64,000 nucleotides of DNA, taken from contig CDMY01000069.1 of NCBI GenBank assembly GCA_001179505.1, positions 124,001 to 188,000 on the forward strand, in the 5' to 3' direction. This document shows, piece after piece, positions 29,372 through 51,537 of the stretch. A program made the position numbers and the translations under genes. Every line of letters starts with the position of its first letter. Position 1 is the first letter of the stretch. The notes under the pieces were generated by a model, which saw only the letters and a list, made by a program, of their open reading frames with translations, was not told the DNA's origin and searched no databases. Source of the stretch: Vitrella brassicaformis CCMP3155 (lineage: Eukaryota; Protista; Chromerida).

Positions 29372-32300
29372 TCATAGCCATGGGTGCCACTTGGGCGGCT
29401 GCTGCATCAGGTTGGCGTGCGTCGATGCCCGCCGGATGAGGTCCATCACGCGCTGGTCGATACACGCGTCATCGTCAACGCCACCCTGATCGACCAACAT
29501 ACACATACACACAGAGGGAGACGTAGATATCGTTCCCAATCAGTGCCCCGCCCCCCTCTATGTGACACTGTGTGTGCGTACCGCAATTGTGTTGGGGTTG
29601 CTGCCGGTGACTGTGAGTCTGACTTGGCTGTAGATGTCGTCGACAATGCGCATGACTCTTTCGGCGAGCCCTCTGGGTGCCGGCACCGTCATGTGCTGGA
29701 TAGCCTGGGCGTGGGCCTCCCTCTCCGCCTGGCTTGTGACCTCCTTGTCCAGCCCGTGTGTGGCTCCTGTGGCAGTGCTGTGCTTGCGCTGCATGTGGGT
29801 GGTGTAGAGCTGGTCCACCAGTGTCGTCAGCTGCTGGCTGCGGTGGTGCAGGCAGTAGATCCAGTAGTCGTCCCGCAGGATCAGCGCCAGGTAGCTCTTG
29901 AAGACCACGTACGTGTCGGCGGCAAACAGGCACTCCCCCATCGAAAAGAGGACGGCCGGGAACAATCCCAGCAGGCCGTGTGGGCCCATCAAGGCCTGCA
30001 CATTGCGCGTCAGCCGGAAGGGCACCCGGTCCTCGCAGTGCAGCTGAAAATTGAGGGGGCTCGCAAGTGGATGGGGGGTGTGTGTCTGGGGGTCGGCCTG
30101 GTCGGCTGCGGCTGTCTGTGTCTGTGTCTGGTTGGCGTCATCGGCAGGGAGCTGCAGGGACGGCCGTAGGTCGTACTGCTGCACCTGCCCAGTGGACCTC
30201 AGCACGTGCAGCTTGGCCGGCGTGATGCCGCCGGCTTTGAACATGTGTGCGAGGAAGGCCAGGATGCCGTACTCGATGATGAAGCGCTTGCTCAGGTGGA
30301 AGGACGCGTCGGCCGTCAGCGCCGAGCGATGCAGGTAGTCGCGCAGCAGATACTCGTCCAGGCCGATGGTGGTCCCCATCACCTCATAGACCTGCTCCAT
30401 CACGCCACGATGGGTGTCGGGGTCATCAGCTTGTGGTGCAGCAGGTGGGGCCGTTGCAGGGGCTGATGCAGCGGCAGCCGCAGCAGCAGGTGCCTCCGCC
30501 CTCCTCTTCTCGCTCTCCTCCCTCTTGGCCCGCCTCGCGTTGGCCATCAGCCGCCGCGCCAGGAGAATGGGGTACTCGGGGTCTCTCATAACCTCCACAC
30601 CATCGTCCTGCTGTGGTGTTGTCGGCCGCCTGTTGGTGATGAAGTCGTCATATATCTCCTGGAAAGAGATAGCGCTGGGGTGGTCCTCGATGAGCCTCAG
30701 ACGTGGGCTGATAGGCACGGTGGTGTGTATGGACAGGCAGAGGCCCCTGCGTCTTGTGTCCTTGCACTTGCTGAGCAGGGTGTTGAGCATCAGGTGCAGC
30801 TGCACCATCCGCACTTCCCCGGCCTGCTGGTGCAGATGGCAGGTCTGCAGGATGAAGGAGTGGTAGTCCCCCCGCTGGCTGATGAGCGTCATACGCCGCA
30901 CCCACACACCGTTGCGCAACACCAGGGGGCAGTACCGGCTCATGCGGTCCAGGTGGCCCCCCGAGGTGTGCCCCTGGAAGTGCTCGCTGTCGGCCCCGCC
31001 CCCGCTGTACATGTGGGCGAAGAGAGGCTTCCAGTAGATGCCGGGAATCTCGACGCTGCGCTTGTTGTGTGCCGGCTGGAAGTACGGCGAGAGGTCGTCG
31101 CTGACGCCGTGCCACCTCGTGAGCAGCAGCTGGCGCGTCAGGAGGTCCTTCCACTTCTTGAGCTTGCCAATGGCAATGCCCACGGGCATCTGCAGGGCGG
31201 GGCCGTCACTCAGGAACTCGTTATCACCGTTGTTTCCCCGGGGTGGCGCTGGCGGTGGGTCGAAGAAGTCCTTGATGATGTCGTCTTTGTAGAGGGCGAC
31301 TATGGCGCTGGTGATGGGCTGGCTGAGGCTGCTCCGCTGGCCCTTGTCCTTCTGCTGCCTGGCGTTGATCATGAGGCGTGAGAAAGTTTTCTGCACCTGC
31401 GCCATGAGGGTGGGGGCGGTGAGGGGCGGCTGCGAGGGGTCGCCGTCGTCGCATGGCAGGTCGTAGAACTTGGAGAGGATGTTGTCGATCACCGACAGCA
31501 TCTCCTCGGCAACGTCACCTCTGAAGAATAAAAAAGTACGTGTGGTGTGTGTCAGATTGCCCTGTCTGCCTCTCCGCCTGTCTGTCTGTTTCACCTGAAT
31601 ACGCTCTCCACGTTCGACACAAAGTCGCTGAAGGGCTGTATGGTGCTGCCGCACTTGTTCTTGCAGTGCGTCGTGACGTCCTCCAGATACGCCAGCGACT
31701 GATGCTTCGTGCCGCCCCCGGTATCACCCCGCCCGTTGGTCCCGGCCGTGCCCGCTGCAGCTGCTGCCGAGGGTCCGTCTGGCGCCTGTGCGTATAGCTG
31801 CTTCTGCTGCAGCAGGTTGCAGATGGGCTGGAGGGGGGAGTTCTTCTTTTCAGCGACGGATGTGCGGAGCTGGCAGAAGATGGCCTGGGCGTACTGGGGC
31901 ATGATGCGACACAGGATGGACTTCATGGCAGGCGCCTCGTGACGCTCCAGACCTGATGAGATGAGTCAGTGAGAGAGGGAGGGATGTGAGTGGACACGTG
32001 ACCGTGTGTCGGTGTGGTGGGGGTGTGTGTGTGTGTGTGAGGTTGGGTACCCACCTGTGATGAGGTTGGGTGTGAATGGTAGCCAGAGGTGGTGGGGGAT
32101 GAACTGGACGTGCTTCTCGAAGGCGCTAGAGATGGGCGAGTGGTGCTGCTCGTCGTCGTACGTCAGCAGCCACAGCACACGCGGCATGTACAGACGCATC
32201 TTCTCCTGACTGCACACACACAGACCCATGCCATCCATCCATCCATCCAGCTCACACCCTTCCCTCCCTCCAGCACAGCAACAGCCACCACACCCCACCC

Positions 32301-33477
32301 GGCACGGCCCGCTCACCGAATGACGATGCCCATCATGTAGCAGGTGATGGCATTGATGGCATAGTTGAGGTCCCGCATGTCCCCCCGCTCGAACATGCTG
32401 TCCGCGAACCGGCCCCACGCCAGCCACCCCTGCCCATACACGGGGTTGATCCGCATCGCCACGTTGTAGTCTTCGTCAGCATCCCGCAGCAGCACCTCCT
32501 CCGAAGGGCCCTCGTCAGGGTGCGGCTCGCTCGTCGCCGGCGGCGCGTTGGGGTCGAACTGGGCGCTGCTGGCGCGGTAGGGGCCGTTGGGGGCGCCCTT
32601 GCTGTCGTCCTTTGGGCTGTTCTGGGGGGTCGCTGCAGCGGTCTTCTCCCGGCTCTCGCGGAGCTTGTTGGCCCTGATTGATTTAATTTAGCGGGTGGGG
32701 GAGAGCAGGGCAGGGCAGGGTGTGTGTGTTGGGGAGGGGAGGGGGAGGGGGAGGGGGATTGCTGTGCTGGCTGACCACTTGAGCTGTATGTTAGCTCTGA
32801 GTTTGAAGAGCTGTGCCTTGTAGCAGTCGTACATCTCCCGCGAGAACTCGGCCTGGTCGAAGTTGAAGGAGTTGATCAAGTTGATGCCTGCCGGACACAC
32901 AACACACAACATCCAACACAGCACCAATGAATCCACCATAGTCCCGTGTGCATGCGCGTGTGTCTGCGTGTCCAGTAGGGTTTAGGGTTTAGGGTTAAGC
33001 CAAACCCTAAGCCCTAAACCCTGAACCCCAAACCCTAAACCCCAAACCCTAAACCCAATTCACCTGCTTTGAGCGAGTCGATGGTCTGGTTGAGCGACTC
33101 GCCGGGCTCGTCCATCAGGCACAGCTTGACCTTTTGCGCCTGCTAAGGCGCCCACACAACAAACAGGTATAGGTATGCACCGACCGCACCAGGGGTGTGT
33201 GTGGTGTGGATGTAGCGGCATTAAGTCAAGTCGAGTGTGTGTGGGATGCGATCGACCACCGCCCCGCACTCACCAGTCCGAGGAAGTTCTCGACGTGGAA
33301 GGCGTCTGAGTCCAGATGCGGCACCACGGGGAGCCTGTACAGCTGCCGCACAGCCACGTCAGCCTGCCGGTGGGTACTCCGGGCGATGCCGGCCAGCTTG
33401 ATCATCGTCCACGGCAGATCCTGACACACCCACACACACACCCACCCACACACCCACACACACAGACACATTGATAC

Positions 33478-33508
<31 letters not shown>

Positions 33509-36500
33509 GGGGGGNNNNNNNNNNNNNNNNNNNNNNNNNNNNNNNNNNNNNNNNNNNNNNNNNNNNNNNNNNNNNNNNNNNNNNNNNNNNNNNNNNNNNN
33601 NNNNNNNNNNNNNNNNNNNNNNNNNNNNNNNNNNNNNNNNNNNNNNNNNNNNNNNNNNNNNNNNNNNNNNNNNNNNNNNNNNNNNNNNNNNNNNNNNNNN
33701 NNNNNNNNNNNNNNNNNNNNNNNNNNNNNNNNNNNNNNNNNNNNNNNNNNNNNNNNNNNNNNNNNNNNNNNNNNNNNNNNNNNNNNNNNNNNNNNNNNNN
33801 NNNNNNNNNNNNNNGGGGGGGGGGGGGGGGGGGGGGGGGTCAGTCAGTCAGTCAGTCGGTCGGTCAGTCGCTGCATCGTGTGGTTCTCACTGACGTGGAG
33901 AAAGGCTGAGAGTTCTCTGCACTCGGGGACGATCAGTCCGAAGCAGCACTCGACGAGGGTGAAGAGGAAGTTGCGCCAGACGCAGATGTCCGTCCAGGAG
34001 ATCATGCTCTCCCACTTGTTGGGCAGACGGTTGCGCCACTGCTGCAGGACGTTACGGCTGAACACACACACACATCATCCAAGTGTGTGGAGTGGACCCA
34101 TTGGCCATCTCCACTGGCTCACCCCCTCACCATTGCTTGAGCGGCAGCTGGTGCTGCAGCCTGCTGGTGTATTCCCTGGCGTGGCGTCGGAGGTCGGGCA
34201 GGCGGAACTCGCGCCGAATGCCGTCCAGCAGGTCCATGCCCTCGACCAACTCTGACACACACACACACATATACACACGCCCCTCCCCTTGTCTCCCTCC
34301 CCTCCCTGTCTGTCTCTTTCTTTGTTTGTTTGTCTCACTCACCGCTGTATTGGTGGCACAGCCTGAGGAGCGGCACGTGTGACTCCGCGACAATGGGCGG
34401 CAGCCGCTGCCACTGGTGCAGCAACACACGCACACCGTCCTGACACACACCACATAAACCACACACAGCCATACCCACACCCACACATTGATTGATTGGT
34501 CTGTCCATTCAGTCACTATCTATTCAGCGTTCGTTGAGCGAAACAGAAACACCCAGCCCACCCATCTTTGTCGCTCCGCATCGTTGAGGTGCTTCTGCGC
34601 CTCCTCCCGGCTCTCTGTGAGGAGGTTGCTGTCTGTCTGGTACAGCACCTGCACGCCCTCACGCACAACCACACATGAATGACCCATGACACCATGACAA
34701 CCAGCACAGCACAGCACAGCACACGCCGACCATTCAGTCCCTCGGTGAGTGGGGTGGGTGATGGACGTCTGCCTGTCTGCCTGTCTGTGTGTATTTTGTG
34801 TTGTGTTGTCCTGTCCTGCCTCCCTCACTTGCTGCAGAGACGAGTAGGCGAGGCCGAGTTTGAGGGCCGCGGGACTGGCACCGGCTGCGGCTCCCTTGGA
34901 AATGACGCTCTGCAGCAAACCCCACTCACCCAACTTGGTCGACACCTCAACCTTTACACACAGCCACAGTCACACGATACGATCTCACACAAAGGTGTTC
35001 CTCTGGTTGGTCTCTCTCTCTCTCTCTCTTTGTCTCAGTCGGTCAGTACTACCTACCTGCAGAGGCATGTCCTGGCACTCTGCGGCCATTTCCTTGAGGG
35101 GCGTCCACTGTGAGAGGTTCTTGGCGCAGGTGACCCAGCCGTCATACCACCAGATCTGATTCTCCCTCTGCGCCTCGGTGCGGACGGCCCCCACTGACGT
35201 GAACAGATTGTACAAACACTGCGAGAAGATGTCCTGCGCCCGCTGCCAGTGGTTGTGCTGCATCAGGGAAGTCGCCTGCTTGGTCTCCAACGACTTGACG
35301 CGCGTGCGGCAGAGGCCGTAGCGGTAGTCGTCCTCCTCGAGATCGCGATACAGCATGCTCAGACACTGCACCCAGCAGCACAGGGAGGTGTCAGGTGACA
35401 CACAGACGAGTGGGGTGGAAGGGGTTGGCACAGTACCTGTGACGGCTGCCATCCTTTGTCAGGTTCTGCGATGAGTTTGGCCTGGAGGTACTCGCGGACG
35501 GCGTGGTAGCAGTTGTGGACCTTGGCCAGCGAGTACAGCTGGTGGGGCATCCAGTTGATGTCGGGGGAGCACCCCAGAGCGCCCTCCAACACCACCCGAT
35601 GAACGCTCACCACGAACCGCTCCTGGGTGCGTGAGGAACTCCTGCTGAGGAACTTGACGAGGGCCTCAGCGATGCGCTCTCTCTCGTCGTCCCTGAAGGT
35701 GCCCCACAGCTGAGGAAAGAGCTCCCGCCAGAGGGCAGCGGCATAGTCCTCATACATGTGGTACAGCTCGCTCAGCGGCCGCAACACGTCGCCCACGGTG
35801 CTGCCCCCGCCGACCACGCCGTCGAGGAACTCGCAGTGGCTCACCAGCACCCCCTTGACGCGCCCAGCCCACTCACGCCCCTCCCTCCCCTCCCCCTCTG
35901 TCAGCCTGTCGGTCTCTCTGTCGATGGACACCGACAGGTCGGTGCTCTCCTGACCGTCCTCGTCAGCCACCACGCCATCCTGCTCCTGCCGCAGCAAGCT
36001 CTCGTCCTCGCCCATGTCCTGGTCGTCGACGTAGGCCGACTCGCGGCTGTAAGTGAGTGCGTCGCCCTTGCCGGCCAGGAAGTCGATGAGGGGTTGGGCG
36101 GAGGGCCTGGCGAGGAGGCGGAAGTGGACAGGGGGGGTGAGGGAGGGCAGCCGGGCGGTGTGTGCGTAGGTGAGGTCGGTGTGGGGTGGGAGGGCGGCGA
36201 TGGTAAGGTCGAGTATTTGTGGGAGGAAGAAGCGGTCGCCGATGACGGCCCACTCCTCCGTCCAGTTGAAGATGGTCTCGACGCGCTGCGCCATCGTGGC
36301 GGGCAGCCGGCTGTTGAAGATGTCCAGAAAGGCTGAGGGACAGACAGACAGACAGACAGTCCGTGTGCTGTGCTGTACTGTGTTGCTGCGATTGCAGTGC
36401 AATGCATCTGACCCACTCACTCACTGACCTTGTCTGATGTATCTGTTGGGTGACGCCATGCCGATGATGGCCGCCCGGACCAGCTTTTCCCACACAAAGT

Positions 36501-39500
36501 TACTGGCCTCCTCCGACCGGCTCCTGCCTGCGAAGGGCTGCTCCCCCACGACATCGCCGCCGCCTTTGCCCGCACCCTCCGCCTCCCCATTGGTCCCGCG
36601 GTGGTCCAGCGGGGTGGCCGAGGTGTCATCGCTGCTCCTGGGCGGGCTGCAGTCGCCCGTGATGACCTTATGAGCGATATCCATGACGTAGAGGTGGAGC
36701 TGCAGGTGGGGTGAGTTGTCCTGGGCCATCATGCTGAGAACCAGCATCGCCACCTCCTCGTAGGTGAGGATCTGGTGCACCATCGCCGACGGCACCGTGC
36801 TGCTGGAGGGATCCATGAAGCCGAAGGGCAGGTAGGGCGGCGCCTTGGGGTCGCGCGGGGGCGGGCTGTCTGTCCGCATGTACTTGAGCAGCCACCCTCC
36901 ACCCCCTTTGCTGCGTCTGGGCGACTCCCCACCACCCCCACCCTCTCGCTCCTCGCCCTGCATCGCCGTCCCGGTAGCCTCGTTGTCGCCCTGAGAGTCG
37001 TCCTCGGTAGCGTCGGCGGCCCGCCGCGCAGGCGGATCTCTCATCCGCCGCTGCTGCTGCCGCTGCTGCTGTGTGGCGGGTGTGGCGATCTGCTCGGGCT
37101 TGTAGCTCTGGATGAAGGCCGCGGCAGACTTCATGGGGTCGTATGTGGCGCCGACGATCCAGCGGCCGACGAGGCGGATCATGTCGATGGAGAGGGGCTG
37201 CGGCACGTGGTAGGAGGTGAAGAGGTCCCGGATGATTTTGAGAAGCTCCTTGCGCAGGTCGTTGGGGAGGTGGTTGAGCCGGCAGGCGGCCATCTGCACG
37301 AGCTCGCTGAGACATGCCACCAGGACCTCGCTGGTGGGGCCGCCATCGTTCCTGAAGGGCCCCACCGCCACACCCAAAGGCGTCATGAAGGGGATGTGTT
37401 GGTGGACGTTGCGCTCGAGTTCCGCCATCTTGCCCGACACGATCAGCGGCGTCTGTAGTACGTACACCACACACACAGCACAGCACAGCAGAGCGGAGTG
37501 CGAAGATCCACGTGCAGTCACTGTACATGGAGGCCTGGCCAGGCTGTCCCGTCCGTCGCGTACGTGTCTTGCGACGGCTTTGAGCATGGCCGGCGCGAAG
37601 TGGTCCAAGAACTGCATCGAGCTGAAGGTGGTGGGCGCCGACCCCACCAGCACCTGCAGCATCTTGGCAGCCGTGTACAGCTGCACCTGCAGCCGGTAGG
37701 TCTGATCGGCCCTCCCCGGCAGCACACCCGGGGGCCCCGGGACGTTCTTGGTGGCCTGCTCGGTGTCTGCGGGGTGGTGCGGTGTGCTCATGACGGGCAG
37801 TATGGCGCTGGGGGGCAGCCCGTTGGCGTCAAGCTCAGTAGACGGGGAGCCCTGGTTCAGGCCGGCAGTGACCACCTCGATCAGCCGCTTGTAGAAGACC
37901 TTGCCACCGCTGCCGCAGTTCTCGTAGCTGGTGGACGCTAGGGCGCTGGGGGGCTCGGGAGGGGGAACGACCTGCACACACAGAGAGAGAGGGAGGGAGG
38001 GAGGGAGAGAGATTGATACGATGCAGGTCCCTGGGGGGGAGGGGAAGAGTGTGTGACCTACCCACCTGGACAAGTTTCCTGAGTAGTGCGACGAGTGAGT
38101 TGATGGATGCCTTGTCGTTGGTGGTGAATGCGGGCGTGAGGCAGTGGGTGATGGCCTCCAGCTTGTCGTGGATCACCTCGGGCGGCTGCTGCTGCACCGT
38201 TATGTGCAGCACCGTCAGAGTCGCGTGCACCGCCCGTATGTATGAGGCCTACACACACACACACAGTTACACCACATCCATCATGTTGTGTGGGGAGGGT
38301 GTGGTGTGGTGTGTGTGTCTGACGGACAGACCAGACCAACGTAGGTACCTGTGCGTAGAACGATTTGGTCCAGTAAGTGTTTAGGTCGTACGGCGAGAGG
38401 TTCTGCAGCTCCTTGTGCGGCCCGAAGAGGGGAGGAGCGAAGGGGCTGGCCACCACGAGCTTCTCCAGGTGGGGGTAGTTGATCGCCGCCTCGGGCCACA
38501 AGGCAAGCGACCTAACACACACACACACATGGCCCAGGCCTGTGTGTTGCTCTCTCTATCACTCAGTGGTGTGGTGGCATGGCCTACGTACGTCCAGAAA
38601 AGGTCGAAGGCGCGCTTGCTCATGTCGAAGTCGTCCTTGACGCTGAGAGCGAGAGCGGTGCGCATGAGGAAGTTGACGACCATCTGGGCCATGTTATCGT
38701 CAATACGGAACTCGAGCTTGTCGCCGCGCTGCATCAGCAGATCGGCCGGCGTCCGGATGTCGCTGTCGTCTATCGCCGTCTCGTCAACGCTGTCGCCGCC
38801 AACTGTATGAGCGGTTTACCCATAAATACCAACACATACACGGACGTGCCTTCGTGTGAGTGAATGCATTTCTTCTGTGTAGTTAGTGGGTGGCTTACGT
38901 GTGGACTCGAATCCGTCCAGCCCGTCGCTTGATGATGGCGAGCCGAAGGAGTCAACGCCCGCAGCCCGTCGCGGCCCTCCTTCTCCCCTCTCCTCACCCT
39001 CACCACCGCCGACACCCTCGGCTGCAGCGGCGGCCATGGGCACGTCCCCCTCCTTGTCCTTGTCCTTGTCTTTAATGTCTTTCTTGTCCTGCTCCTTGGC
39101 CATGCGGGCCCGCTTGGCCGCCTTCTGAGCCAGAGGCGTGTCCTCGTCCATGTCGTCCTCCTCCTCACCCGCTGCTGCCGCTGCCGCCGCTGCCTTGGAA
39201 GGCTCCCTTTGGCGCTTCTTTCGCTGCGATGGGGGGCCTTGGGTGTCATCGGCTGCTGCAGCTGCTGTGGGCTCTGCTGGGGATGAGGGGAGCACCTCGG
39301 TGTCCCGGCCGTACCGGCAGAGAGCCGCCTGCTCGTCCACATAGCGGGCCTGACAAAAACAAAGGAACGAACACACAACAAACACGATTTCTGGCTGGCT
39401 GGGTGGACCATGTCATGTCTGTGTGAAGGGTTCGTTCGATTGGCGCAAGGACGTGAGGCGACTTGCCTGCCACTTGACGACGAGTGCCGCGATGTCTAGA

Positions 39501-42500
39501 GCGACCCGTCGGTGCTCCGATGCAGAGGAGGATCTCGTGTGCGCGAGGCCGAGGCGGTTGAGTGAGTGGACCATCTGGGTGATGAACTTGGCCTTCCACG
39601 GGTAAAAGACGTCGGCATGACGAATGATCTGATCATTGATTGACACACACATACACACACGCAACACAACCACCACAGCACAGCCAACAGAGTGCAGTGC
39701 GCGGAGGGGATGGATCCCATCCCCCTGCAGAGCTGTGTGTGTGTGTGTCAGCTAGCTGACTGACTAACCAGGTTCCACACATGGACGGTCTGGCTGATGT
39801 TGTGGGCCTCGTCGATGAGCGTCCGCAGTGTCCATCGCACCCAGTTGGGCACGCCCGAGTCGCCGATCCGCCGGGGCAGCGCACGAGTCAGCATGTCCAG
39901 GGCCGTCCGCAGCAGCTCACGCGGCGTGTCGTTCTTGTGCTGCTTCAGAAGCGCCACATAGACCTGGACGATGATTTTTGAGGGCGTGTCGTAGACGTCG
40001 ATGAATCTGCAGATGGTGATGTAGCCCCACAGCTGGACGGTCTTGGATTCGCTCCGCAGGTGGCTCCAGGCGAACTTGATGAACTCCCGACGGTGGTCCG
40101 TCAACTCGTTGTGGGCGTACTGAGCCAGAATGGTCGCCAGACGCAGCAACTCGACCCTAAGCAAGAAGATCACAACACAGCAGACACATGTCATGTGTCT
40201 CAGACGCTCATCGGTTGGTCCATCTACTCTCCCCCCTCCCCCCCGCTCCCATTTCATTTCCCTTACTTGAGGGCCTCCTCAGCGGGTGTGTACTGCCTGC
40301 CCTGCTGGTCTCTCTGCTCCCTGTCCGTCTCCAACACGTGGCTCATGACCTTCCGGATGAGATCGGGCTCCAGCACATGCTGGTCGGCGCACTGCAGCAC
40401 GGCCTGCTCGAACGAGGCATGGGTGGCCGGGGGGAAGGCCTGGTGCTGGTCCTGGCCATGGCCGTGGCCGCCGCGGCGGCGCTTGAAGGTGCTCTCTAGC
40501 ATGGGGATGATGATCACCTGAAGGCCTGAAGGCACGTCAAACCATACGAAAAGTGTGTGTGGTGGTGTGGTGGTCGTGTGGTTGTGGTTGTGGTTGCACC
40601 GAGCACTCTCTGCAGCGGCTGCATGTAGTAGACTTGCTGGCCGTCCTTGACCATCGGGGTGCCGTCTTTGTTGGTCTCCTTCCTTTGCCAGAAGTTGAGG
40701 AAGCACTGCAGGATGTCGCGGCGCTCAAAGGACAAAGGCGTCTGGGTGACGGTGCGCGTCAGCCACTCGGCCACGTACGAGTAGTCGACCGTCGACCGCA
40801 CACACAGCGCGTTCACCAGAAACAACAGCGTGTGCACCCTGAAAAGACATACATACACACACAGGCACACGAATGCACCCACCCATACACACCCATCCAC
40901 TCCACCTTCCCCCCCACCCCCACAGGACATACCTACCTGAGGTTGGCCAGGCCTTGCCAGATGTCATCAGAGTAGGGCACCTCCCACTCATAGCCCGTTC
41001 CGTAGCCAGCAACACCCACATTCGTCAGGCCGTTGCCCCCGCTCCCATTCTCGCTCGTTGCCGGGCTGTCTCGCCGACCGATCAATGAGCCCGATGGCGA
41101 CGGCGAGGGCGATGGGGCACCCTCGCCGCCACCGCCGCCTCTGCTTACGACACGCCACCTGGGTGCTGACGCCCGTATGAGCCAGACCATGCACTTGATG
41201 AGCATGCGGCACTCCCTCGTGTGGAAGAAGGCGTCAGGGTGGTCGGGCTGCTGCATGCCGTTGGGCCCCACGGTTTTCTCCATCTGCTGCTGCTGGGAGA
41301 ACCCCACTGGGGAAACGTGGGGCATCGGCATGGGCACGGCCGTGCCCGCGATGACCGGCTGTGTGATGAGCCGCCACGTGTTGGCCAGCGCTTCTGCGAG
41401 TGTGAGTGGGTTGGCGGTTTGCTGATATGGGGGCAGCGGGTTGGGCGGCTGGGGCGGGGGTGGCGGTGGCGAGGCATCCAGTCCATCGGGCTGCTGCTGC
41501 TGGTTTTGACGGTCCTCTTGTTTGTTCTTGTAGGCCTCCATCTCTTTGTCGTATTCCTGCTTCCTGAACTTGTACTCCTGCTGATTCAGACGCTCCCGAC
41601 GGAAATAATCCTCCTTGACGCAACAATACTCCCTATGACATCACACCCAGAGAGAGACACAGACACAGACACAGACAGCACAGCCCATGCACACCACACC
41701 TGCCCGTGTGGAGGGGACGTGTGTGTGTGTGTGGCGTACAAGTAGGTACCTGAAGAGGAAGTCTGGCTGGAAGTGTGTAAGCGCGTGGATGACCCTGATG
41801 GCCTGCAGCACCCTCTCTGGCAAGGTGAGCATGTGGTAGCTCCTGCTGCGCATCTCGTTGTGGGCGTCCTCAAACACACGGACCAGCTCACACGACGCCT
41901 GACGCACCTGCTCCCTGAAGGGCTCAGTGTGTTTCATTTTGAGCATCTGCACGAACAGATTGAGCTGCTGGGGCGGCATGCGGCCCTCCCGCAGCTTGCG
42001 CAAGAAGTAACCGGCCGACTCGCGAGGGAAGCGGGCGCAGAAGAGCGACAGGGGGTAGCGGTAGGGCGAGCTGAGCTGCCCCAGCTTGCCGGCGTGTGCG
42101 AGGTGGGTCTCGAGGCCGGGGATCGTGAAGTCGCCCATTGTGGTGTTCATGAGGGTGTCCAGGAACTTCTCGGGGGCGGGCGGCAGCAGGTAGAAACACG
42201 TCAGCATCGTGGCCGCAACCTGCCAGCCGTCCATCGACACACACAGAGAGAGAGAGAATGACACGCTGGTGTGTGTGTGTGTCATTTCACTCTGTGTGTG
42301 TGTGTGGCGAGCGAGCCAGCACCCTCCCTCCTTAGTTACTTTGACTTCTTCTGATGTCCTCCATGATTTGAAGTCCCTGAGCTCCTTGGGCAGCTGCTGG
42401 TCGCGAGGCCTATTTGGCTGAATCGGGTGCAGCCAGTGCACCACCCCAGGTACCACAGGCAGCAGCGGGGCGATGGTGGTCTGGCCCAGCTTGTCTGCCG

Positions 42501-45500
42501 AGTTCCACTTCCTTAGGTGGTCCAGCAGCTTCTCGCCCAGCGTCACGTTGAAACAGGATGACAGCAGCTCCAGGAGACGAGCCAATCCCTGACAGGTAGA
42601 CAAACAGATGGATGGATGGATGGATGGACAACAGGACTGACTGACGGGCATCTACCCACCTGTAGCAGTGGTGTGTTGAGTTTCTGGGGATTGGCGAGGT
42701 TGAGGAGTATCGGCCGCAGGCTCCCGCGCAGGTTGTCCTCGGGCAGCAGGTCCGCCTGGGGGCTGCCTCCCAGGCCCCCGCCCTCGGGGAGGTACCGCTC
42801 GTTCTTCTTGATCGACCGCAGCGCGTGCTGTGCCGCATTCACCACCTCTATGTCACGACGGGTCAAACACCTACACACACACACGGACGGCATGACCTGA
42901 CGCGGGTGGGTGTGTTTGGGTGTGTGCAGTGGAGTGCAGCGAGCCAGAGAGGGTCCGGTCTCTACCTGAAGAGTGTTCCGATGAGTGCCCCTCTGAGGTC
43001 AGCGGGTTCCTGTGTCTGCTGCTGCCGCCCCTGCTGGCTGCTCGAGTCCTGCGGCGGCTCCGGCTTGCTGAATCTGGGAGGGCCCTTGAGCAACCGGAAC
43101 CTGCACAACACAACACAACACAACACAACACAACACCACCACATGCTATGCAGTCACATCCATCCATCCATCCAGACGGGCAGGCTGACCAGACTGGGTG
43201 CAGTATAACGAGTTTGATGACGCGGATGTAGTAGACGACAAGAGTGACCTTGGTCTGGTAACCGTCGTCCCACAGCCTCAGCGGCACGTCCTCCTCGGGC
43301 ACCCCGCCGCCCAGCGTGTGCGTGGGGGGCCGGCTCTGCTGCTGCTGCTGCTCCAGCCGATCCTTGAGGGCCGTCTCCTCAGCCTTCTTCTGCTCCTCAC
43401 TGTCTTGATCTAGCAGCGTTCGAACCGTCTCAACGAACCTGCACACACACACATGTGGGTGTGGTGTGTGTATGGGTGTGGAGTCTGGTCTGACTGTCAG
43501 ACCCTTGTATGAGATCGTCCTGCAGGTCTCGTGAGGTCATGGGGGGTCTGAGCGCGAGGAAGAAGCACATGCAGTCGCACTGAGCCAGCTTGTAGTTATC
43601 CGCCAGCCGGAGGAACTCCTGCGGCAAGAAGTACTTGGCCGTCCCGTCGTACATCCGATGAGCACTGTCGACCCGCCCCACACTCTCCGCTCCCTGCGGT
43701 AGGCCACTCGCCGATGCGCCAGCAGCGGCGGACGATGAACCCGTCTCGTCTGCCGGCTTCGCTCCAGGGGCGGCGGCCGCAGCGGCTTCCTGACCGCCCT
43801 TTCTGTCTTGATGGGGCTGCTGTGTGGGGGTGGTGGTAGTGGGCTGCATGTTGGGAGGGAGTGTGATGACCTGCTGGACGGACACCTGGAGGACCTCGGC
43901 GATGAAGACCAGGATGCGCTGCGCACACCGACGCTGAAAGACACGCCCCGCACAAAGCTCCATTACCATGCTGCGGCAACACCTGCATGGATTGCATTCA
44001 TTCGCCAAACAGTCAGTGCAGTCAGTCAATGCACTCAACTCCCCCATCACACGTGTGTGTTTTTCTACACAAGAAGGTCCTGTCCTCACTTGTAGAGTCC
44101 TTGCCTCATCGGCGCCCTCCCCGGGTCGCTCATCAGCTGGTCGAGCGTCAGCCGCCTCCCAACACCACCACCACCATAAGGATCCCGCTCGGCCTCGCCG
44201 GCAGCGATGCTCATGCCGGCGGCTGATGCCTCAGCTGCCGCCGTGCTGTCGGCTGCCTTGCGCTCCACGGCCGGGGATGAGTCTGGGGAGGCCGCCCGTG
44301 GTCGCGGGCTGCGGCGGGCGCGGCTATTTTTGTGCCGGAGGAGGTCGGGCTCGCCCTCGCCGCACACGTAAGCCACCAAAGTCATCATGGTCTCCTGCAA
44401 AGGCAACGAGAATAGCCGGGGGGTGTCTGTCTGTCCACTCCACTCTCTCTGTCTGTGTGTGTGTGTCCATGCCATGCCATGCCTACCATGGCGAGTCTTT
44501 CCGTGACGAAGGACAGGCCGCTGGCGTGGTCGCGCAGGGCATACTGTGCCGCGCGGAAGATGCGGGTGAAGTGTACTTTGGACCACGATGGGGGCACGAG
44601 CTTGATGAGCCGCGTGAGGGCCAGGCACCCCGCCCCCGCCTTGCGCCAGTTGACGCCGTAGCAGAGCTGTGCGAAGGTGGTGAGGAGGACCTCGCAGAAG
44701 AGCGATTCGGCCACGACCTTGTCGGTGCTGGTGGGCTGGATGGCGAAGAAGGTCTCGACGATGAGCTGCAGGGCGTGTAGCACCACGGCCGTCAGGCGCA
44801 TGTGCACCGGGTCCACATCGACGTTCTCCTGCACCCAAGCATCACACACACACACACATACACACATACACACGTCATTTCAACACCCACACCGCAGACA
44901 GAGAAGCGTCACGCTCTGACTGACCTGGATGGCGAGGAACACGCAGTAGGGGTCGATCTCGTGGAGGCAGTGGGCCTTGAGGGAGTGTGCCTCACCGCTA
45001 GTCGATTTGGGGGAGATGCGGGTGGCGAAGACGATGCCCAAATGGCGAAATATGCCCTCGAAGAAGGGGAACACCTTCGTCCCGATATCGGGGTCAGCCA
45101 CCGCCAGGAACAGCCCCCTGAAGATCTGACCCAGCAGCTGCTGCTCGGCGCTCCGGCAGGCGATGCTCCGGTGGGCGAGCTCCTCAAGCTCCGGCTCGGG
45201 CGGGCCGGTGTCGTAGCCGCCGAAGGAGAAGGGGTCGACGGGCGGGGGCAAAGGGGGCGTGTCGACGTCCATCATGGCGACAGACTGCCTCTGTCGCCTC
45301 TCACGCGCGCCCTGCAGCGGACCGTCGCGCTGCTGCGCACGGTGCAGCAGGAAGCGGTACACCTGAGTGCAGTGCAGTTCAAACACATACATACCGACAC
45401 ACACTGGCTGCCTGACGGCATACCCTACGTGTACCCCACCCCACCGGACCGACCCGTTCGAGTGTCTTGTCTCCCTTGCCGCTCTCCAAGTTCATCAGCG

Positions 45501-46918
45501 GCATGAGGCAGTGCTGCAGGAAGGAGAAGCAAAACATCTTGAACTCCCCGTCCAGCCGGGGCGGAGCCGCCTCCCCAGCCGCAGCAACCATAGCTGCCAC
45601 CCTGGCCTGCGTCGCCGCACCACCATATGCAATCGGGTTGACCGTGCCGGTCCCAGCGCCACCCATGGCACCCTCCAGAGCCCGCACACACATCTGCACG
45701 GCGCCGTCGAGGCCCAGCGGGATGGTCGGGTCGGGCGCTTTGGGCTCCTCGGCGTCCGCCATCCTCACGTCGGGGATGGGCTGCTGCTGCTGCTGCGGGG
45801 GCCTCCTGCCTTTGTCTTTCTTGTCTGCTGGCTCGTCGATGTCCATCGGGGCTGGGCCGGTGGCTGGGGTCTCCTGTGGCCCGGTCTTGGTGCGCACCGA
45901 CGTGCCGGTGGGCTCCGTCTTGATGTGTGGGTGGGCGGGGGCTGGGGCGGGTTGCGGTCCAGGTGCAGGTGCAGGTAGTGGGAGTGGCGGGGACGGGGGG
46001 CCGCTGTGCACCACCAGACCCAGCTGCAGCAGGTCATACGGGTACTTCCGATACTGATCACACAATACACACACACACACACACACACACGTACAAGCGA
46101 AGACATACATACGGGTCAGTCAGTCACTGTCAGCCATTAGACAGACATTTATGTGGGTGGGAGCTCGTGTAGGTGGCTGGCTGACTGACCGGCATGAGTA
46201 TGGGTTCCTTGATGAACCATCTGTTCTTGCCGCCCAGCTTGCCCAGGATCCGGATGGTCTGCGCGGCGTTGGAGCGGCGGTGCTCCGGCAGACTCTCAGT
46301 GTGACGGTCGCCACGGTAGAAATGCAGGTAACGATGAAACCCTGTGCAATACACAGACAGACAGACAGACAGGCAGAGCCGATGCAATGCATTGCCATGC
46401 ACCATCCCTCCCTCCCTCCCTCCCTCTGTCTGTGTGTCCCTCCGTCCTTCGATGCCATGCTGACTGACCATGTGACTGGCCAATAGGCGATCCGCAGGCC
46501 TTGAGCAGGTCGCAGAGCGCCTCAGTGAGCGGTGCCCTGGTCTGGGTGTTGCTGCCCTCAAACCGTTGGAGGTAGAACTGCTGGTGCTGGGGGGGCGGTG
46601 CGGCGCCCACGCCGGTCATGTCGTTCGTCCAGTGTGTGTAGCAGGGGTGTAGGCAGAATGACTCGGACTGATGGTGGCTCATGATGACGGCGTAGAGCAT
46701 GTTGTTGTCGAGGCCGTCGATCCACCCCTCGAGCATCCTGAGGCCCATCGAGACGATCTCGGGGTCTTTGCTGCGGAGCGCTAGGCACGTGGGAATGGTC
46801 AGCTGCGGCAGGAACGGCAGCTGGTCCTTCAACATTATCGGCACCGTCATACACACCTCCAGCCAAGAATCCTGTAGACCAAACCGCATGGCACACACAC
46901 ACACACATGGGGCCATGT

Positions 46919-46962
<44 letters not shown>

Positions 46963-49900
46963 GTGTACTCAATCACCCACCTTGAGGTGGACAGGTGCGT
47001 CGGCATGCAGCTGTATGACGGTCTCGAGGAACCACTTGACCATTGGCTGGAAGAGCTTGTACAGCTCATAGGCCCGCCCGGCCGGGGAAATGTTGCGGAA
47101 CAGCGCCTTGAGCACCTGCAGGATGTTGCTGGACCGGTGTGTCGTCTGCGCCAGGGTGATGCATGTGTGGATGAGCGTCTGAAAGTGGGGCTTCAGCATC
47201 AGCTCTCCGGAGGTGGCCTCGGTGCTGCTTTGGTTCTGCTGGATCTGGTGGGCGATGGTCTTGAAAAGCAGCTTGAACAGCCGCAGCACCACGGTCGAAC
47301 GAGTGTGCTTGAGCTGCCCGGTGGGCGAGTGCAGCTCGGACCCCACACCCAGAACGAACCCTTGGTGGCCCTCACGCGCCCTCCCGCCATCAGCCCTAAC
47401 AAACATACAGACAGACATCATGTGCAGACAGACAGACGGTAATACTCGGGCGTGGTGGTTCTCTCTCACCTGACAGCACGGGCGTCGGTCCTTCCTCCCG
47501 GCTGGCCACCAGCACCACCCCTCTCCCTCTCCCTCTCTCTCTCTCTGTCTGCCTGCGGCTCCCCTGTCGGCCCACCGCCACTTGCGACGGCGGCCTGCCT
47601 CGCCTCCTTAATGACGTGCACCGGTTCGTTGCCCATGCCCAGATATCTGAGTGGCCGGTTGGAGGCCGACCCGTTGAGTCTGAAGTGCTTGGCGGCGAAG
47701 TCGTTCATCGTCACGGCCGACCCCAGCGCATCGTAAGGAGGGTTGGGCACCTTGGCGTACGAGTCGACAGCTGGCGCCAGCTTGGTTTTGTCATCGGGGT
47801 CGTCCCGGGGGTCGACGATCTCCATGGGAATGTCGTCTTGGCCATCCCGACCGCCCGACCTGCCGCTAACACCCCGCCACACTATTCCACTCCTCGGCGT
47901 GCCAGTCCTCGAACCAGTGCGGCGATCCCGGTGGTCTGACTCCTGCATTGCATACCAACACAGAGACACACATCGGGGACCACGTGGGTGTGGTGAAGTG
48001 CACTGGTAGGTAGAGTGAGTGACCTGTAGGTCTACTCGGTCGATGTGGGGATCGACCACCAGCCGTGATGGCTTGTCCCGCCGGTGGGAGATGTCGTACA
48101 GCTCCTTGGGGTAGCTGGCCGAGGCGTCCTGGGGCGACCAGATGGACGGGGGCAGGGCGGGGGTGCCGGGGGGCGCCTGCTGCTCGTGGTGGGGGTGGGG
48201 TGGTTTGTCAGTCGGTGTGGGGTCTTCGTCGATGAGCCAGTGCAGCCGCGGCATGAGGAAGTTGAGCAGCACCTCGCCGAACGTCTGTACGGGACGCAGA
48301 CAGACAGACAGACAGGGGAAACAGAAGTGTGTGTGTGTGTGTGTATGGGTAAGGTGTGTATTATGTTCTGTGTTGCGCGCTGTCTGTTTGCAGCCCACCG
48401 ACTGAGTCACTTACCCGTGAGGTGGTTGGGTATGAGATGAGCACTTGCATGGGAACGATCATGATGGGGTCCTCCAGACACTCCTCAAACAGAAACTCAA
48501 TCTCGTGGTGCATCAAATCCTACACACACAACACACACAACACAACACAGAGAGAGATCGAACCGCTCCCGCACTCCTACATTTGGCTGTCTGTCTCTCT
48601 GTCACAGTCACACACACACGCACACACACACGCACACACACACGCATCGCATGCCCACCTGGAAGTTAGAAGGGTTCATGCAGCAGAACATCTTCGAGAA
48701 CATGTCGGTGGCCTCCTTCTCCTCCATCTGCGCAAAGTTCAGCCGCGCGTCCGAGTAGCACCCCCGGCCCACGGCATGTGCGAACAGGGTCCTGTGCTGC
48801 ATGTAGTGCGGCACGTGGCCGCACACCGTGCACCCGCCACCGCCCCGCGGGTAAGCCACCGTCAACGGCGGCCATGGCTGCTGGGCCACCGCCTGAGCAT
48901 AGATCCTGCAGACGGCGAGGCCGTTCTTCAGCAGCTTGGTCAGGTGCTGCAGCTCGGTGTCTGCGAATGGCTGCGGCCCCTGCTGCATCGGGGTGGGCGG
49001 CCGGGGCCCGCCAAGACCCCCTAATGGCGGCTCGCGCGGCGCCTCTGGCGGGTAGTGGTTCATCGCGTAGAAGATCGACTGGATCCCCATGATCAGAACT
49101 CGGATGATCGACTTGGCCTCCCTTATGGTGTTGTCGATATTGGTGCTCTCGACGAGCACGTTGCCGCGGGCGGGGGGGAGGGAGGGGGAGAGAGAGGGGG
49201 AGCCACTGGGGATGCTGGTGGCGTCTGGGTGGGGGAGGAGGGGGTCGCTTGCGGGCGGGGGCGAGGGGGGCCGGTTCCTGCGCAGCCACGCGTTGCTGCC
49301 CAGGTCGTTGGGATCGACATGCAGAAGCTGACAGATTAACAGAATGACCAAGACATCCACACGCAATGTGCTCGTCGCAGCAGTGGGTGTGCGGTCGCCC
49401 ACCCGTGGCAGGTGGTATCGGAGGGAGGCGAACTTGTCGATGAAGCAGTAGAGTATCTTCATGAACAGCGCCCGCCCCCGGCTCTTGTCCTGCTCGTGCC
49501 TGTTGGTGTAGATGCTCTCGCACACCTGCACCAGCATCTTTAGGGCGTGGTTCTGCGTCTGCATCGGCAAGGACGTGTCCGCCGACAGGCGCGTGAAGAT
49601 GTGCACCGCACGCGACAGCTGGCTCATGGTCAGGTCCTGCCGGAAATGCCCAACCACCTCAGCCAACGCCGAACACAGCAGAGGCCTGCCAACCACACGC
49701 GCACACGCCATTGCCATGCGTGTGTGGGCTCGATGTGGTGCGTCTCGTGTTGTCTGTCAGGGTCAGTCAGGGTCACCTGAGCAGCTCATATGAGGTGCAT
49801 CCCCACCCCAGTAGGAGGGTCTCGTCGAGCAGCGGGTCGACGCGCTCACGGAGGCGCTGCCGCATCTCCGTGTTCAGGATCTGACGCACAGCAGTCAGCA

Positions 49901-51537
49901 GCTCCTTCCTGAATGAACGAACCAATGCAACCCACGATTGAAAAGATGAACAACATATATGCACACACATGAATGACATGAGATGACTCATGTGTGCATG
50001 AGAAAGTCGCATGGGTGTGGGGTATTGTATTGTATGTCCCCCCGTCCGATCTGATCTTACACACCGTATGGTGACGTTTTCGTGTGGGCATTTCTTGAAG
50101 AGGTCAATGAGGGCCGTACACGTGTCCTCCATCCGCTGATACACATCCTGACCTGCAGACATGTCCAGACAGACAGACAAACAAACAAACAGACAGACAG
50201 AGGGAGAGAACACCCAATGAGTGCCCCTCTCTCCCATCTCTCTCTCTTGCATGGGCCAGCCAGGCTGCCTGACTGACCGACCTGGTTGTCCGCCCTGCTG
50301 TCCGAATTGTGGGTGCTGCCTGCTGAGGAAGACCACGAACGAGAGGGTCTTGACCTGCGCCGTTAGCAGGTCCGTCAGGGTCGAACGACTCAATTCCGCG
50401 ATCTGCGGAATCTGCTCCTTGCCGCACTTGAGAAACACCATCATGTGCTGGGACAAGGCCTGAGACACACACATAACACACATCCCATCCACCCATTCAC
50501 TCGTCGGTTCGGTCAAGGGTGTGTCTGAGTCCGTCTTTCTGTCTGTCTGTCTGTCTGTCTGTCGTGGGTTTGGTCCTTTAAGTACATGTATGTTTTGGTT
50601 CATGTATCTGGGGTAGAGCTGGAACATGACCATGACCATCAGGGGGCACTCGGACATGACCTTGAAGCTGTCCCGCGCCCTCGTCGACACCTGCACCCCC
50701 GTCAGGCCCCCCAGCCCTCCCAGCGGAGGCAGATCCATGCTCGCACCATCGCGCCCGGCGTGCACGCCCCCCAGTGGCTGTTTCTCCTTGAGCTTGGCGT
50801 CGTTTTGGCGGGTGATAGCGTTGGCAACCATCTGGTGTGTGTTCTCGTAGAGGCTCTCCATGAAGCGGAGGAATGCGGGGCAGTGTCCCTCGAGGCCCTG
50901 CCTGTACGTCTTGTGGATGTTGAACATGGTGAGGATGCAGGCGATGGCGTTGTCCTCGTTATCGTGCTCCAACACGTGCTGACACATCTCCAACATGCTC
51001 TGCACATGAACACATAAACACATTGACAGACAGACAGACAGAGGGGCATACACACATCCCATCCCATCCACACACAGCCTGTTTGCCTGGCTGCATTGCC
51101 AGGGTTTGCTCACGTTGACGTAAGGTTTGAGTGTGTCGTCGCAGCGCAGCCTGGAGAACACGTCGATGATGCCATTGCGGATGCGCTGCTTGGGGTTGTC
51201 GACGAACTGAGCCGGCTCGTGGATGAGGATGCGCCGGAAGGGCTCGAACAAGTGCTGCAAGAACAGGGCGCCGTCAGCGGGGTTGGACGCGTCCACCGCA
51301 TCGCGGATCTCGTTTGTGATCTGCTGACGCTCACGGTCGTCTGCATCAATCAATCACAACACACACATAACCGGTCCACACACAGGCACAGGGCAAGGCT
51401 CTCTGCGTGTGTGCCGACGTGTGTCGGTGTGTGTCAGACATAGAAATACCTGGCTGGCCCTCCTTTTCAGTTAGGCGCCTCGCATAGTCCTGGAGCTCTT
51501 GTTCTGTCATCTTGGTCAGCGTCGTCAGCCGCACCAT
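29372..51537 (-). CDS. TRRAP: TRRAP/Tra1, PIKK-family pseudokinase scaffold of SAGA and NuA4; dozens of introns
   Basis: N-terminal DNEDNAIACI, SFKVMSECPL, RKELLTAVRQIL and LLDETLLLGWG are Tra1 HEAT motifs. FAT region WRNRLPNKWE..W. Kinase-like EDRVPFRLTRNVQ. FATC end DLIRRASTHANLMQQPPKWHPWL* with stop at 29372-29374. Confidence 0.95.
32976..33056. repeat. Interstitial telomere-type repeats in inverted (head-to-head) arrangement inside a TRRAP intron
   Basis: tagggtttagggtttagggtt-aagcc-aaaccctaagccctaaaccctgaaccccaaaccctaaaccccaaaccctaaaccc: about 3 TTTAGGG units then about 7 CCCTAAA/CCCTGAA/CCCCAAA units. Confidence 0.9.
33515..33814. other. Assembly gap (300 N) between poly-G runs, inside a TRRAP intron
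   Basis: Flanked by runs of more than 20 G. The exons on either side join as ...SAFLH|DLPWTMIKLAGIAR, so no exon seems to be missing. Confidence 0.9.

What the first reader, a model, noticed from the sequence alone, without database searches (positions are those of the whole stretch)
32976..33056. Inverted telomere-repeat junction (TTTAGGG)n-(CCCTAAA)n inside a TRRAP intron
G-strand repeats run into C-strand repeats across a 5-nt spacer, the geometry of a telomere-telomere fusion. Variants TTCAGGG and TTTGGGG are present; TT(T/C)AGGG is the Plasmodium-type repeat. It starts only ~7 nt after the donor (CAG|GTGAATTGGGTTTAGGG...) of a ~170-nt intron in an intact conserved gene, so it cannot be a true chromosome fusion point. 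More likely it records telomerase-mediated or telomeric-fragment repair of a double-strand break, possibly intron gain or expansion. In pre-mRNA it could form a ~20-bp hairpin or a G-quadruplex right beside the 5' splice site.
Basis: partly seen in the sequence, partly recalled or inferred. Interest (0 to 1): 0.8.

Follow-up and report, generated by a model that had tools for sequence, protein, structure and literature searches.

The report
Head-to-head telomere repeats inside an intron
An 81-base block of telomere-type repeats, arranged head-to-head, really does sit inside a normally spliced intron of the TRRAP gene of the alga Vitrella brassicaformis. It is most likely a harmless scar of DNA-break repair, a kind of insertion already known from animals.

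Summary
On the + strand, 32976-32996 is (TAGGGTT)x3, followed by a 5-nt spacer and then about 8 CCCTAAA-type units at 33002-33056. This is the only telomere-like array in the 64-kb window (8 matches against 0.05 expected).

- **Not an artefact.** Read-based contigs from two separate DNA studies reproduce it without a single difference.
- **Spliced out.** RNA contigs from two further studies, plus an MMETSP transcript, remove exactly 32888-33063. That is a 176-nt GT-AG intron, number 44 of 49, in the Tra1/TRRAP gene of Vitrella brassicaformis CCMP3155 (CEL92378.1).
- **Looks like an insertion.** The array starts 7 nt after the donor. Without it the intron is 95 nt, against a gene median of 102. 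The remainder has the A/C-rich then G/U-rich polarity typical of this gene's introns.
- **Intron position.** It is absent from the Cardiosporidium, Toxoplasma, Achlya and Balamuthia orthologues, but so are most Vitrella introns, so intron gain is not shown.

Best reading: an interstitial telomeric sequence inserted during double-strand-break repair and carried as a neutral passenger. The predicted hairpin and G-quadruplex motif are untested.

The scan has noted other internal telomere-like tracts and polarised AC...GT introns elsewhere in this genome. I rate this a new member of a known kind, of modest interest.

The parts
33002..33056 (-). G-rich arm in the pre-mRNA: about 8 telomere-type heptamers (TTTAGGG x3, TTTGGGG x2 plus a truncated TTTGG, TTCAGGG x1, CTTAGGG x1). 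Eight G-tracts give a canonical G-quadruplex motif.
32997..33001 (.). 5-nt junction or spacer (AAGCC on the + strand) between the two arms. It is not a perfect palindrome centre.
32976..32996 (-). C-rich arm in the pre-mRNA: three perfect units, (TAGGGTT)x3 on the + strand. It pairs with the G-rich arm.
32888..33063 (-). Intron 44 of 49 of Tra1/TRRAP: 176 nt, GT..AG, phase 1 within a conserved Gly codon (...DSLKA[G]INLINSF...). It is spliced out in RNA contigs.
   Evidence: joint 32886->33063, cut +1, in runs X8 and X10; public proteins P0001 and P0151 read across it.
32888..32975 (-). Body of the intron: A/C-rich 5' part followed by a G/U-rich 3' part. It folds as a second hairpin (-46.4 kcal/mol sense, -24.5 antisense, 8 G.U pairs). 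Together with GTGAATT it makes a typical 95-nt Vitrella intron.
33064..33139 (-). Upstream exon 44 (76 nt, ...AQKVKLCLMDEPGESLNQTIDSLKA).
32776..32887 (-). Downstream exon 45 (112 nt, (G)INLINSFNFDQAEFSREMYDCYKAQLFKLRANIQLKW).
29375..51537 (-). Whole Tra1/TRRAP coding region (5534 aa, 50 exons), Vitrella brassicaformis CCMP3155, CEL92378.1.

Best explanation
This is an interstitial telomeric sequence: an 81-bp head-to-head block of telomere-type heptamers at +8 to +88 of intron 44 of the Vitrella Tra1/TRRAP gene.

The most likely history is as follows. An ordinary 95-nt intron suffered a double-strand break just after its donor, at about +7/+8. Both broken ends acquired telomeric repeats, either from telomerase or by capture of telomeric DNA, and were then rejoined. 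That leaves the G-strands pointing at each other.

Today the block is a passenger. The donor hexamer and the rest of the intron are intact, the spliceosome removes the whole 176 nt, and the mRNA and protein are unaffected.

Shown here: the sequence is real, it is spliced out, it is foreign to an otherwise typical intron, and it is unique in the window.

Inferred: the break-repair origin, the involvement of telomerase, and neutrality.
For: - **Real DNA.** Two independent read-based contig sets match with 0 differences.
- **Precise GT-AG splicing.** Seen in RNA contigs of two studies and in MMETSP transcript ORF P0001.
- **Only array of its kind.** It is the only telomere-like array in 64 kb and the only 7-nt tandem repeat with 3 or more copies. 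A telomeric source is therefore far more likely than ordinary microsatellite birth.
- **Length fits an insertion.** At 176 nt the intron is the second longest of 47 ungapped introns (median 102, quartiles 91-121). Minus the array it is 95 nt.
- **Composition fits an insertion.** The 95-nt remainder has the gene's usual polarity: A+C 0.64 in the 5' half and G+T 0.85 in the 3' half, against gene means of 0.57 and 0.65. With the array included, the 5' half drops to A+C 0.26.
- **Motif fits the lineage.** The telomerase of Chromera velia, another chromerid alga, makes TTTAGGG, and this motif is inferred to be ancestral for Myzozoa (PMC3622300). Amoebophrya scaffold ends carry mixed TTTAGGG/TTTGGGG (PMC7789003), the same mixture seen here.
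- **Published precedent.** Short interstitial telomeric sequences are one-step insertions made during break repair. 31% of the human ones lie in introns, and a head-to-head case has been described (PMC7215372). 63% of C. elegans ones are intronic (PMC6800518).
Against: - No empty orthologous site was available. The orthologues I could fetch lack the entire intron.
- Neither flank shows telomere-register microhomology (AATT|GGGTTTA and CCAG|TAGGG on their own G-strands).
- The 14-nt higher-order period could equally reflect later slippage.
- The donor has an unusual A at +5 (4 of 48 introns). The event may therefore have altered the splice site region, which neutrality does not predict.
Confidence: 0.6

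Rival explanations
1. One-sided telomeric insertion followed by a local fold-back. A single-orientation array was inserted or expanded first. A template switch or snap-back during replication or repair then copied about 3 units in inverted orientation.
For: The three units next to the junction pair with the other arm at 95% over 20 nt across a 6-nt loop (pair I5). This is the shape fold-back priming leaves. The arms are very unequal (3 versus 8 units). The 14-nt period shows the long arm has its own internal history.
Against: The centre is not a true palindrome. The units nearest the junction differ between arms (CTTAGGG/TTTGG versus TTTAGGG/TTAAG). Orientation alone cannot separate this model from the main one.
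Confidence: 0.2
2. The block is a functional element. In the pre-mRNA, a hairpin or G-quadruplex at +13 to +88 tunes use of the weak donor (GTGAAT). Alternatively, in DNA it binds telomere-repeat proteins, in the way a plant telo-box does.
For: The telomeric half folds at -40.6 kcal/mol (z = -4.0). The whole intron has z = -8.8 to -9.3 and is the most structured of 47. It has eight G-tracts. The donor is sub-consensus at +5.
Against: There is no conservation evidence at all. It is a single locus in the window. It lies in intron 44 of 49, about 18 kb from the start codon, unlike telo-boxes. The intron is spliced like its neighbours in assembled RNA. An earlier follow-up in this scan found no sign that intron ends in this genome evolved to pair.
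Confidence: 0.08
3. De novo intron gain. The repair event created the entire intron 44 in a previously continuous exon.
For: No intron interrupts the conserved Gly codon in Cardiosporidium, Toxoplasma, Achlya, Balamuthia (40 exons) or three intronless unidentified orthologues. GCAGG is repeated at both intron borders ('both' = 5).
Against: Only 3-5 of the 13 Vitrella introns compared are shared with the apicomplexans, which are known to have lost many introns (PMC4501334). The non-telomeric 95 nt look like any other intron of the gene. GCAGG is simply the splice-site consensus.
Confidence: 0.07
4. The block is part of a mobile element: an introner or MITE-like foldback element that carries telomere-like repeats.
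For: It has an inverted-repeat architecture. Introner elements with hairpins exist in the related Amoebophrya (PMC7789003). Unverified scan notes describe dispersed telomere-like elements in this genome.
Against: No second copy exists in the window. In whole-run contig sets, only pieces of 27 nt or less of simple repeat matched elsewhere at 95% or better. The inverted repeat is not at the two intron ends. There is no convincing target-site duplication.
Confidence: 0.03
5. Assembly or library artefact, for example a chimeric read or a telomere mis-join.
For: This is a draft assembly, with an N gap 450 bp away flanked by poly-G runs.
Against: Contigs from two different studies are identical across the block at flank-level depth.
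Confidence: 0.02

Closest known systems
Short interstitial telomeric sequences (short ITSs) of vertebrates, inserted during double-strand-break repair (Nergadze et al. 2007, PMC2246262; Santagostino et al. 2020, PMC7215372)
   Same: A short internal run of telomere-motif units. About a third of the human ones lie in introns. The literature treats them as one-step insertions with no required function, and describes a horse locus with head-to-head telomeric stretches.
   Different: The motif here is the 7-nt TTTAGGG type with TTTGGGG variants, in a chromerid alga. The two arms abut directly, without the accompanying inversion or duplication of flanking DNA described in the horse. No empty site is available to prove insertion.
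Head-to-head fusion ITS at human 2q13
   Same: Two telomeric arrays with G-strands converging on a junction.
   Different: The human case marks a fusion of two ancestral chromosomes and is flanked by subtelomeric DNA. This one is 81 bp inside an intact, collinear gene.
Intronic ITS tracts of Caenorhabditis (PMC6800518)
   Same: Degenerate telomere repeats preferentially located in introns and absent from exons.
   Different: The nematode tracts number in the thousands and are linked to small RNAs and repressive chromatin. Nothing of that kind was tested here, and inverted junctions are not a described feature.
Hairpin-forming introner elements of Amoebophrya (PMC7789003)
   Same: An alveolate relative with introns that carry inverted repeats able to fold as hairpins.
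   Different: Those are repeated families, with inverted repeats at the two intron ends, direct repeats at the borders and often non-canonical splice sites. This is a single-copy GT-AG intron whose palindrome sits in the 5' half only.

Membership tests
Short interstitial telomeric sequence (break-repair insertion) | Tandem telomere-motif units at a non-terminal site | tested here: met
   About 11 units lie inside a gene, with exons mapped on both sides.
Short interstitial telomeric sequence (break-repair insertion) | The motif equals the organism's own telomere repeat | not testable with these tools
   No Vitrella chromosome end was available. This is inferred from the Chromera telomerase product TTTAGGG (PMC3622300) and from Amoebophrya TTTAGGG/TTTGGGG scaffold ends.
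Short interstitial telomeric sequence (break-repair insertion) | An empty orthologous or allelic site showing one-step insertion | not testable with these tools
The orthologues I fetched lack the whole intron. Two metagenome scans found no Vitrella-like locus.
Short interstitial telomeric sequence (break-repair insertion) | Junction signatures, such as in-register microhomology, small deletions or filler | tested here: inconclusive
   Neither flank is in telomere register (AATT|GGG, CCAG|TAGGG). A 5-nt non-telomeric junction separates the arms.
Telomere-telomere chromosome fusion site | Head-to-head arrays with G-strands converging | tested here: met
   The + strand reads (TAGGGTT)n and then (AAACCCT)n.
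Telomere-telomere chromosome fusion site | Subtelomeric or unrelated DNA on the two sides | tested here: not met
   Consecutive exons of one conserved gene flank it, and they are joined in mRNA.
Introner / MITE-like intron element | Multi-copy family with shared sequence | tested here: not met
   There is no other copy in the window. In the X1 and X2 contig sets only simple-repeat pieces of 27 nt or less matched elsewhere. This was not a full genome search.
Introner / MITE-like intron element | Terminal inverted repeats at both intron ends plus a target-site duplication | tested here: not met
   The telomeric palindrome occupies +8 to +88 only. The GCAGG at both borders is the splice consensus.
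Plant-type telo-box regulatory motif | Short AAACCCTA motif in a promoter, 5' UTR or first intron | tested here: not met
   It lies in intron 44 of 49, about 18 kb downstream of the start codon.
Polarised AC...GU introns of Vitrella | A/C-rich 5' half and G/U-rich 3' half | tested here: met
   This holds for the 95-nt remainder (0.64 and 0.85) but not for the telomeric block.

The most novel reading that the evidence does not exclude
The block is a fossil of two-ended chromosome healing. Telomerase added repeats to both ends of an internal break, and the two new telomeres were then fused back together. If so, telomerase in Vitrella would act routinely at internal breaks. That would fit the scan's unverified notes of telomere tracts abutting coding exons elsewhere in this genome. 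It would also make such scars a source of intron expansion and of structured RNA next to splice sites.
Probability: 0.2. Interest if true: 0.55.

Novelty: new member of a known kind. Interest (0 to 1): 0.3.

Why it matters
It adds a clean, read-verified and splice-verified example of a head-to-head interstitial telomeric insertion in a chromerid alga, a lineage whose telomere biology is essentially undescribed. The Vitrella genome paper does not mention telomeres.

A long hairpin and G-quadruplex motif placed 7 nt from a donor site is tolerated by the spliceosome here. A genome-wide count of such scars, together with the variant composition of true chromosome ends, would show how often telomerase or telomeric DNA takes part in break repair in this organism.

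On its own this is a curiosity rather than a new mechanism.

Tried and rejected
- **Close-relative locus.** I looked for a Chromera or dinoflagellate TRRAP locus to date the intron. None appeared among the 150 best representatives or in the word search. Cryptosporidium P0008 and Vitrella P0151 were too long for the look-up of encoding contigs. P0001 is not on record as a called gene.
- **Environmental alleles.** The search for related loci with P0001 and an exact 28-mer from exon 45 found nothing in JGI metagenome contigs.
- **Second hairpin.** I first took the second hairpin of the intron (z = -5.3) as a special feature. I dropped this after seeing that 5 other TRRAP introns fold similarly. 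The scan has also already described polarised AC...GT introns genome-wide, with a follow-up finding no evidence of selected pairing.
- **Intron absence as evidence of gain.** I rejected this because most neighbouring Vitrella introns are also absent from the apicomplexans.
- **GCAGG border repeat as a target-site duplication.** I rejected this because it is the splice consensus.
- **Earlier findings by sequence.** The look-up returned nothing. The operators warn that this means nothing.
- **Vitrella's own telomere motif.** I could not verify it.
- **Spliced models.** No self-joined spliced model was sent to any search tool. Searches used a window ORF by reference and database proteins. Adjacent exon pairs were joined only inside a script, to check splice borders against the public protein.

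Full report
**What is there**

On the + strand the window reads ...GTCCAG (TAGGGTT)x3 AAGCC (AAACCCT-type)x~8 AATTCAC|CTG.... Tandem Repeats Finder reports two arrays:
- 32976-32996: period 7, 3.0 copies, 100% matches.
- 33002-33056: period 7, 7.9 copies, 83% matches. A 14-nt period scores higher here (4.1 copies, 88%).

In the sense of the gene (minus strand) the units are TTTAGGG x3, TTTGGGG x2 plus a truncated TTTGG at the junction, TTCAGGG x1 and CTTAGGG x1. Three perfect CCCTAAA-type units follow.

A two-unit telomere pattern with up to 2 mismatches matches 8 times in the window, all at this site, against 0.05 expected from shuffles. Single 10-mers such as GGGTTTAGGG occur nowhere else. 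The arms pair over 20-24 nt at 86-95% complementarity.

**Is it real?**

Logan contigs of two runs from different studies (X1 record 1, 3670 nt; X2 record 15, 732 nt) cover 32767-33416 with no differences and no gaps. Their depth equals that of the flanks. A chimeric or adapter artefact is therefore very unlikely. An assembly gap (N at 33515-33814, flanked by poly-G) lies 450 bp away, inside the preceding-but-one intron, and does not touch the array.

**Organism and gene**

- Minus-strand ORFs around the site match Pfam Tra1_ring and PI3_PI4_kinase.
- A representative search with the largest 3' exon returned a 100% identical MMETSP transcript ORF, P0001.
- P0001's cluster contains CEL92378.1, a 5534-aa protein of Vitrella brassicaformis CCMP3155 (P0151).
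- Mapping P0151 onto the window places the whole coding region at 51537-29375 on the minus strand. It has 50 exons and 49 introns: 48 GT-AG and one apparent GC-AG.

**The intron**

RNA-type contigs of two further studies (X8 record 22, a 4252-nt spliced transcript; X10 record 13) skip 176 nt with CT..AC ends on the + strand. Resolved, this is 32888-33063, GT..AG on the minus strand. P0001 and P0151 both read ...DSLKA-G-INLINSF... across it.

This is intron 44, phase 1, within a Gly codon that is conserved in every orthologue aligned.

**The array looks like an insertion into an ordinary intron**

- The 47 ungapped TRRAP introns are 64-180 nt long (median 102, quartiles 91-121). At 176 nt this one is the second longest, and without the 81-nt block it is 95 nt.
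- The gene's introns are polarised. A+C averages 0.57 in the 5' half and G+T averages 0.65 in the 3' half.
- The 95-nt remainder gives 0.64 and 0.85, which is typical. With the block included, the 5' half falls to A+C 0.26.
- The scan has independently noted this intron polarity across the genome. One follow-up judged it real but found no sign of selected pairing.

I therefore treat the second hairpin of this intron (32888-32975) as the normal body of a Vitrella intron rather than as part of the finding. It folds at -46.4 kcal/mol in sense and -24.5 in antisense, with 8 G.U pairs.

**Structure**

As RNA the intron folds into two adjacent hairpins:
- Whole intron: -88.2 kcal/mol, z = -8.8 or -9.3 in my own shuffles. 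It is the most structured of the 47 introns.
- Telomeric half alone: -40.6 kcal/mol, z = -4.0.
- The first 12 nt, including the donor hexamer, stay unpaired.
- The G-rich arm holds eight G-tracts with 3-4-nt loops, a canonical G-quadruplex motif. This is read from the sequence and was not tested.

Five other introns of the gene also have z <= -3.6. All of them are built from complementary simple repeats. No length-matched exon fragment reaches -3.5 (0 of 40).

**Is the intron position old?**

I fetched orthologous loci and mapped their exons. None has an intron in the conserved Gly codon:
- Cardiosporidium cionae (L001).
- Toxoplasma gondii ARI (L002).
- Achlya hypogyna (L003).
- Balamuthia mandrillaris (L006, 40 exons).
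- Three intronless contigs of unknown origin.

Two other introns are at exactly the same alignment columns in Vitrella, Cardiosporidium and Toxoplasma. One is the immediately upstream intron (after ...ENFLGL) and the other follows ...GIVIR. One more is shared with Cardiosporidium only. About 8 of the 13 Vitrella introns in this C-terminal part are not shared.

The genome paper also notes far fewer introns in Apicomplexa (PMC4501334). Absence here therefore says little, and intron gain is neither shown nor needed. Chromera, perkinsid and dinoflagellate loci could not be obtained.

**Origin**

- The motif is the telomere type expected for this lineage. Chromera telomerase synthesises TTTAGGG, which is inferred to be ancestral for Myzozoa (PMC3622300).
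- Amoebophrya scaffold ends carry mixed TTTAGGG/TTTGGGG (PMC7789003), the same alternation seen in the long arm.
- Vitrella's own chromosome ends were not examined, so this link is an inference.
- In vertebrates, short interstitial telomeric sequences are one-step insertions made during double-strand-break repair. 31% of the human ones are intronic, and a horse locus with head-to-head stretches is described (PMC7215372; PMC2246262).
- In C. elegans, 63% of such tracts are intronic (PMC6800518).

The orientation here, with G-strands running into the junction, is what two telomerase-extended ends would give after rejoining. It is equally compatible with a one-sided insertion followed by a fold-back copy of about 3 units. 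Neither flank is in telomere register and the centre is not a perfect palindrome, so the sequence does not decide between the two.

**Mobile element?**

There is no second copy in the window. In the whole-run contig sets only simple-repeat pieces of 27 nt or less matched elsewhere at 95% or better. A few contigs do carry other telomere-like runs: X1 record 7, and loose ends at 32996. This argues against a high-identity repeat family, but it was not a full genome search.

**Verdict**

Break repair is the best but unproven origin, and intron gain is unsupported.

It is a new member of a known kind (an intronic interstitial telomeric sequence in a head-to-head arrangement) in a lineage where such things have not been described. 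The scan has already noted other internal telomere-like tracts and the polarised intron style on other pieces of this genome. Those notes are unverified leads. Interest is modest.

Noticed in passing
window 51341-51449, 50153-50281, 46342-46468, 39629-39768, 29486-29581 (minus strand): Five further TRRAP introns fold into long hairpins built from complementary simple repeats (AC...GT, GAGGG...CTCCC/CTGT), with z <= -3.6. They are usually much more stable in sense than in antisense. No length-matched exon fragment reaches z <= -3.5 (0 of 40). The purine- or AC-rich arm is always 5' and the U-rich arm 3'.
   Followed up: partly
window 33421-33894: The assembly gap (N 33515-33814), flanked by 23-25-nt poly-G runs, lies inside intron 42. 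The MMETSP transcript ORF P0001 reads across it, so the gene is continuous there.
   Followed up: partly
window 39350-39466 (minus strand): Intron 29 of TRRAP appears to be a GC-AG intron (donor GCAAGT, 117 nt). It is the only one of the 49 that is not GT-AG.
   Followed up: partly
P0010 (CEM37313.1, on a 9.7-kb Vitrella contig): A 219-aa Vitrella protein is 87% identical to residues 523-576 of the kinase-region exon of TRRAP. This suggests a partial duplicate of the gene's 3' part elsewhere in the genome.
   Followed up: no
window 32977 (run X8, loose end): An RNA-type contig matches the telomere-like repeats from 32977 onward but has unrelated sequence before them. Telomere-like repeats therefore seem to be transcribed from at least one other locus.
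   Followed up: no
window 31000-33480: Nine marine-sediment metagenome runs (X12-X20, two studies) hold 6-19% of the sampled 31-mers of this stretch. This hints that Vitrella or a very close relative occurs in sediments and could supply natural alleles.
   Followed up: no
window 33140-33273 and 32210-32316; L001, L002: Two Vitrella TRRAP introns (after ...ENFLGL and after ...GIVIR) sit at exactly the same alignment columns in Cardiosporidium cionae and Toxoplasma gondii. They are ancient shared intron positions.
   Followed up: yes
window 33058-33063: The donor of the telomeric intron is GTGAAT. A at +5 occurs in only 4 of 48 introns of the gene (G in 36), so the splice site next to the insertion is sub-consensus.
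   Followed up: partly
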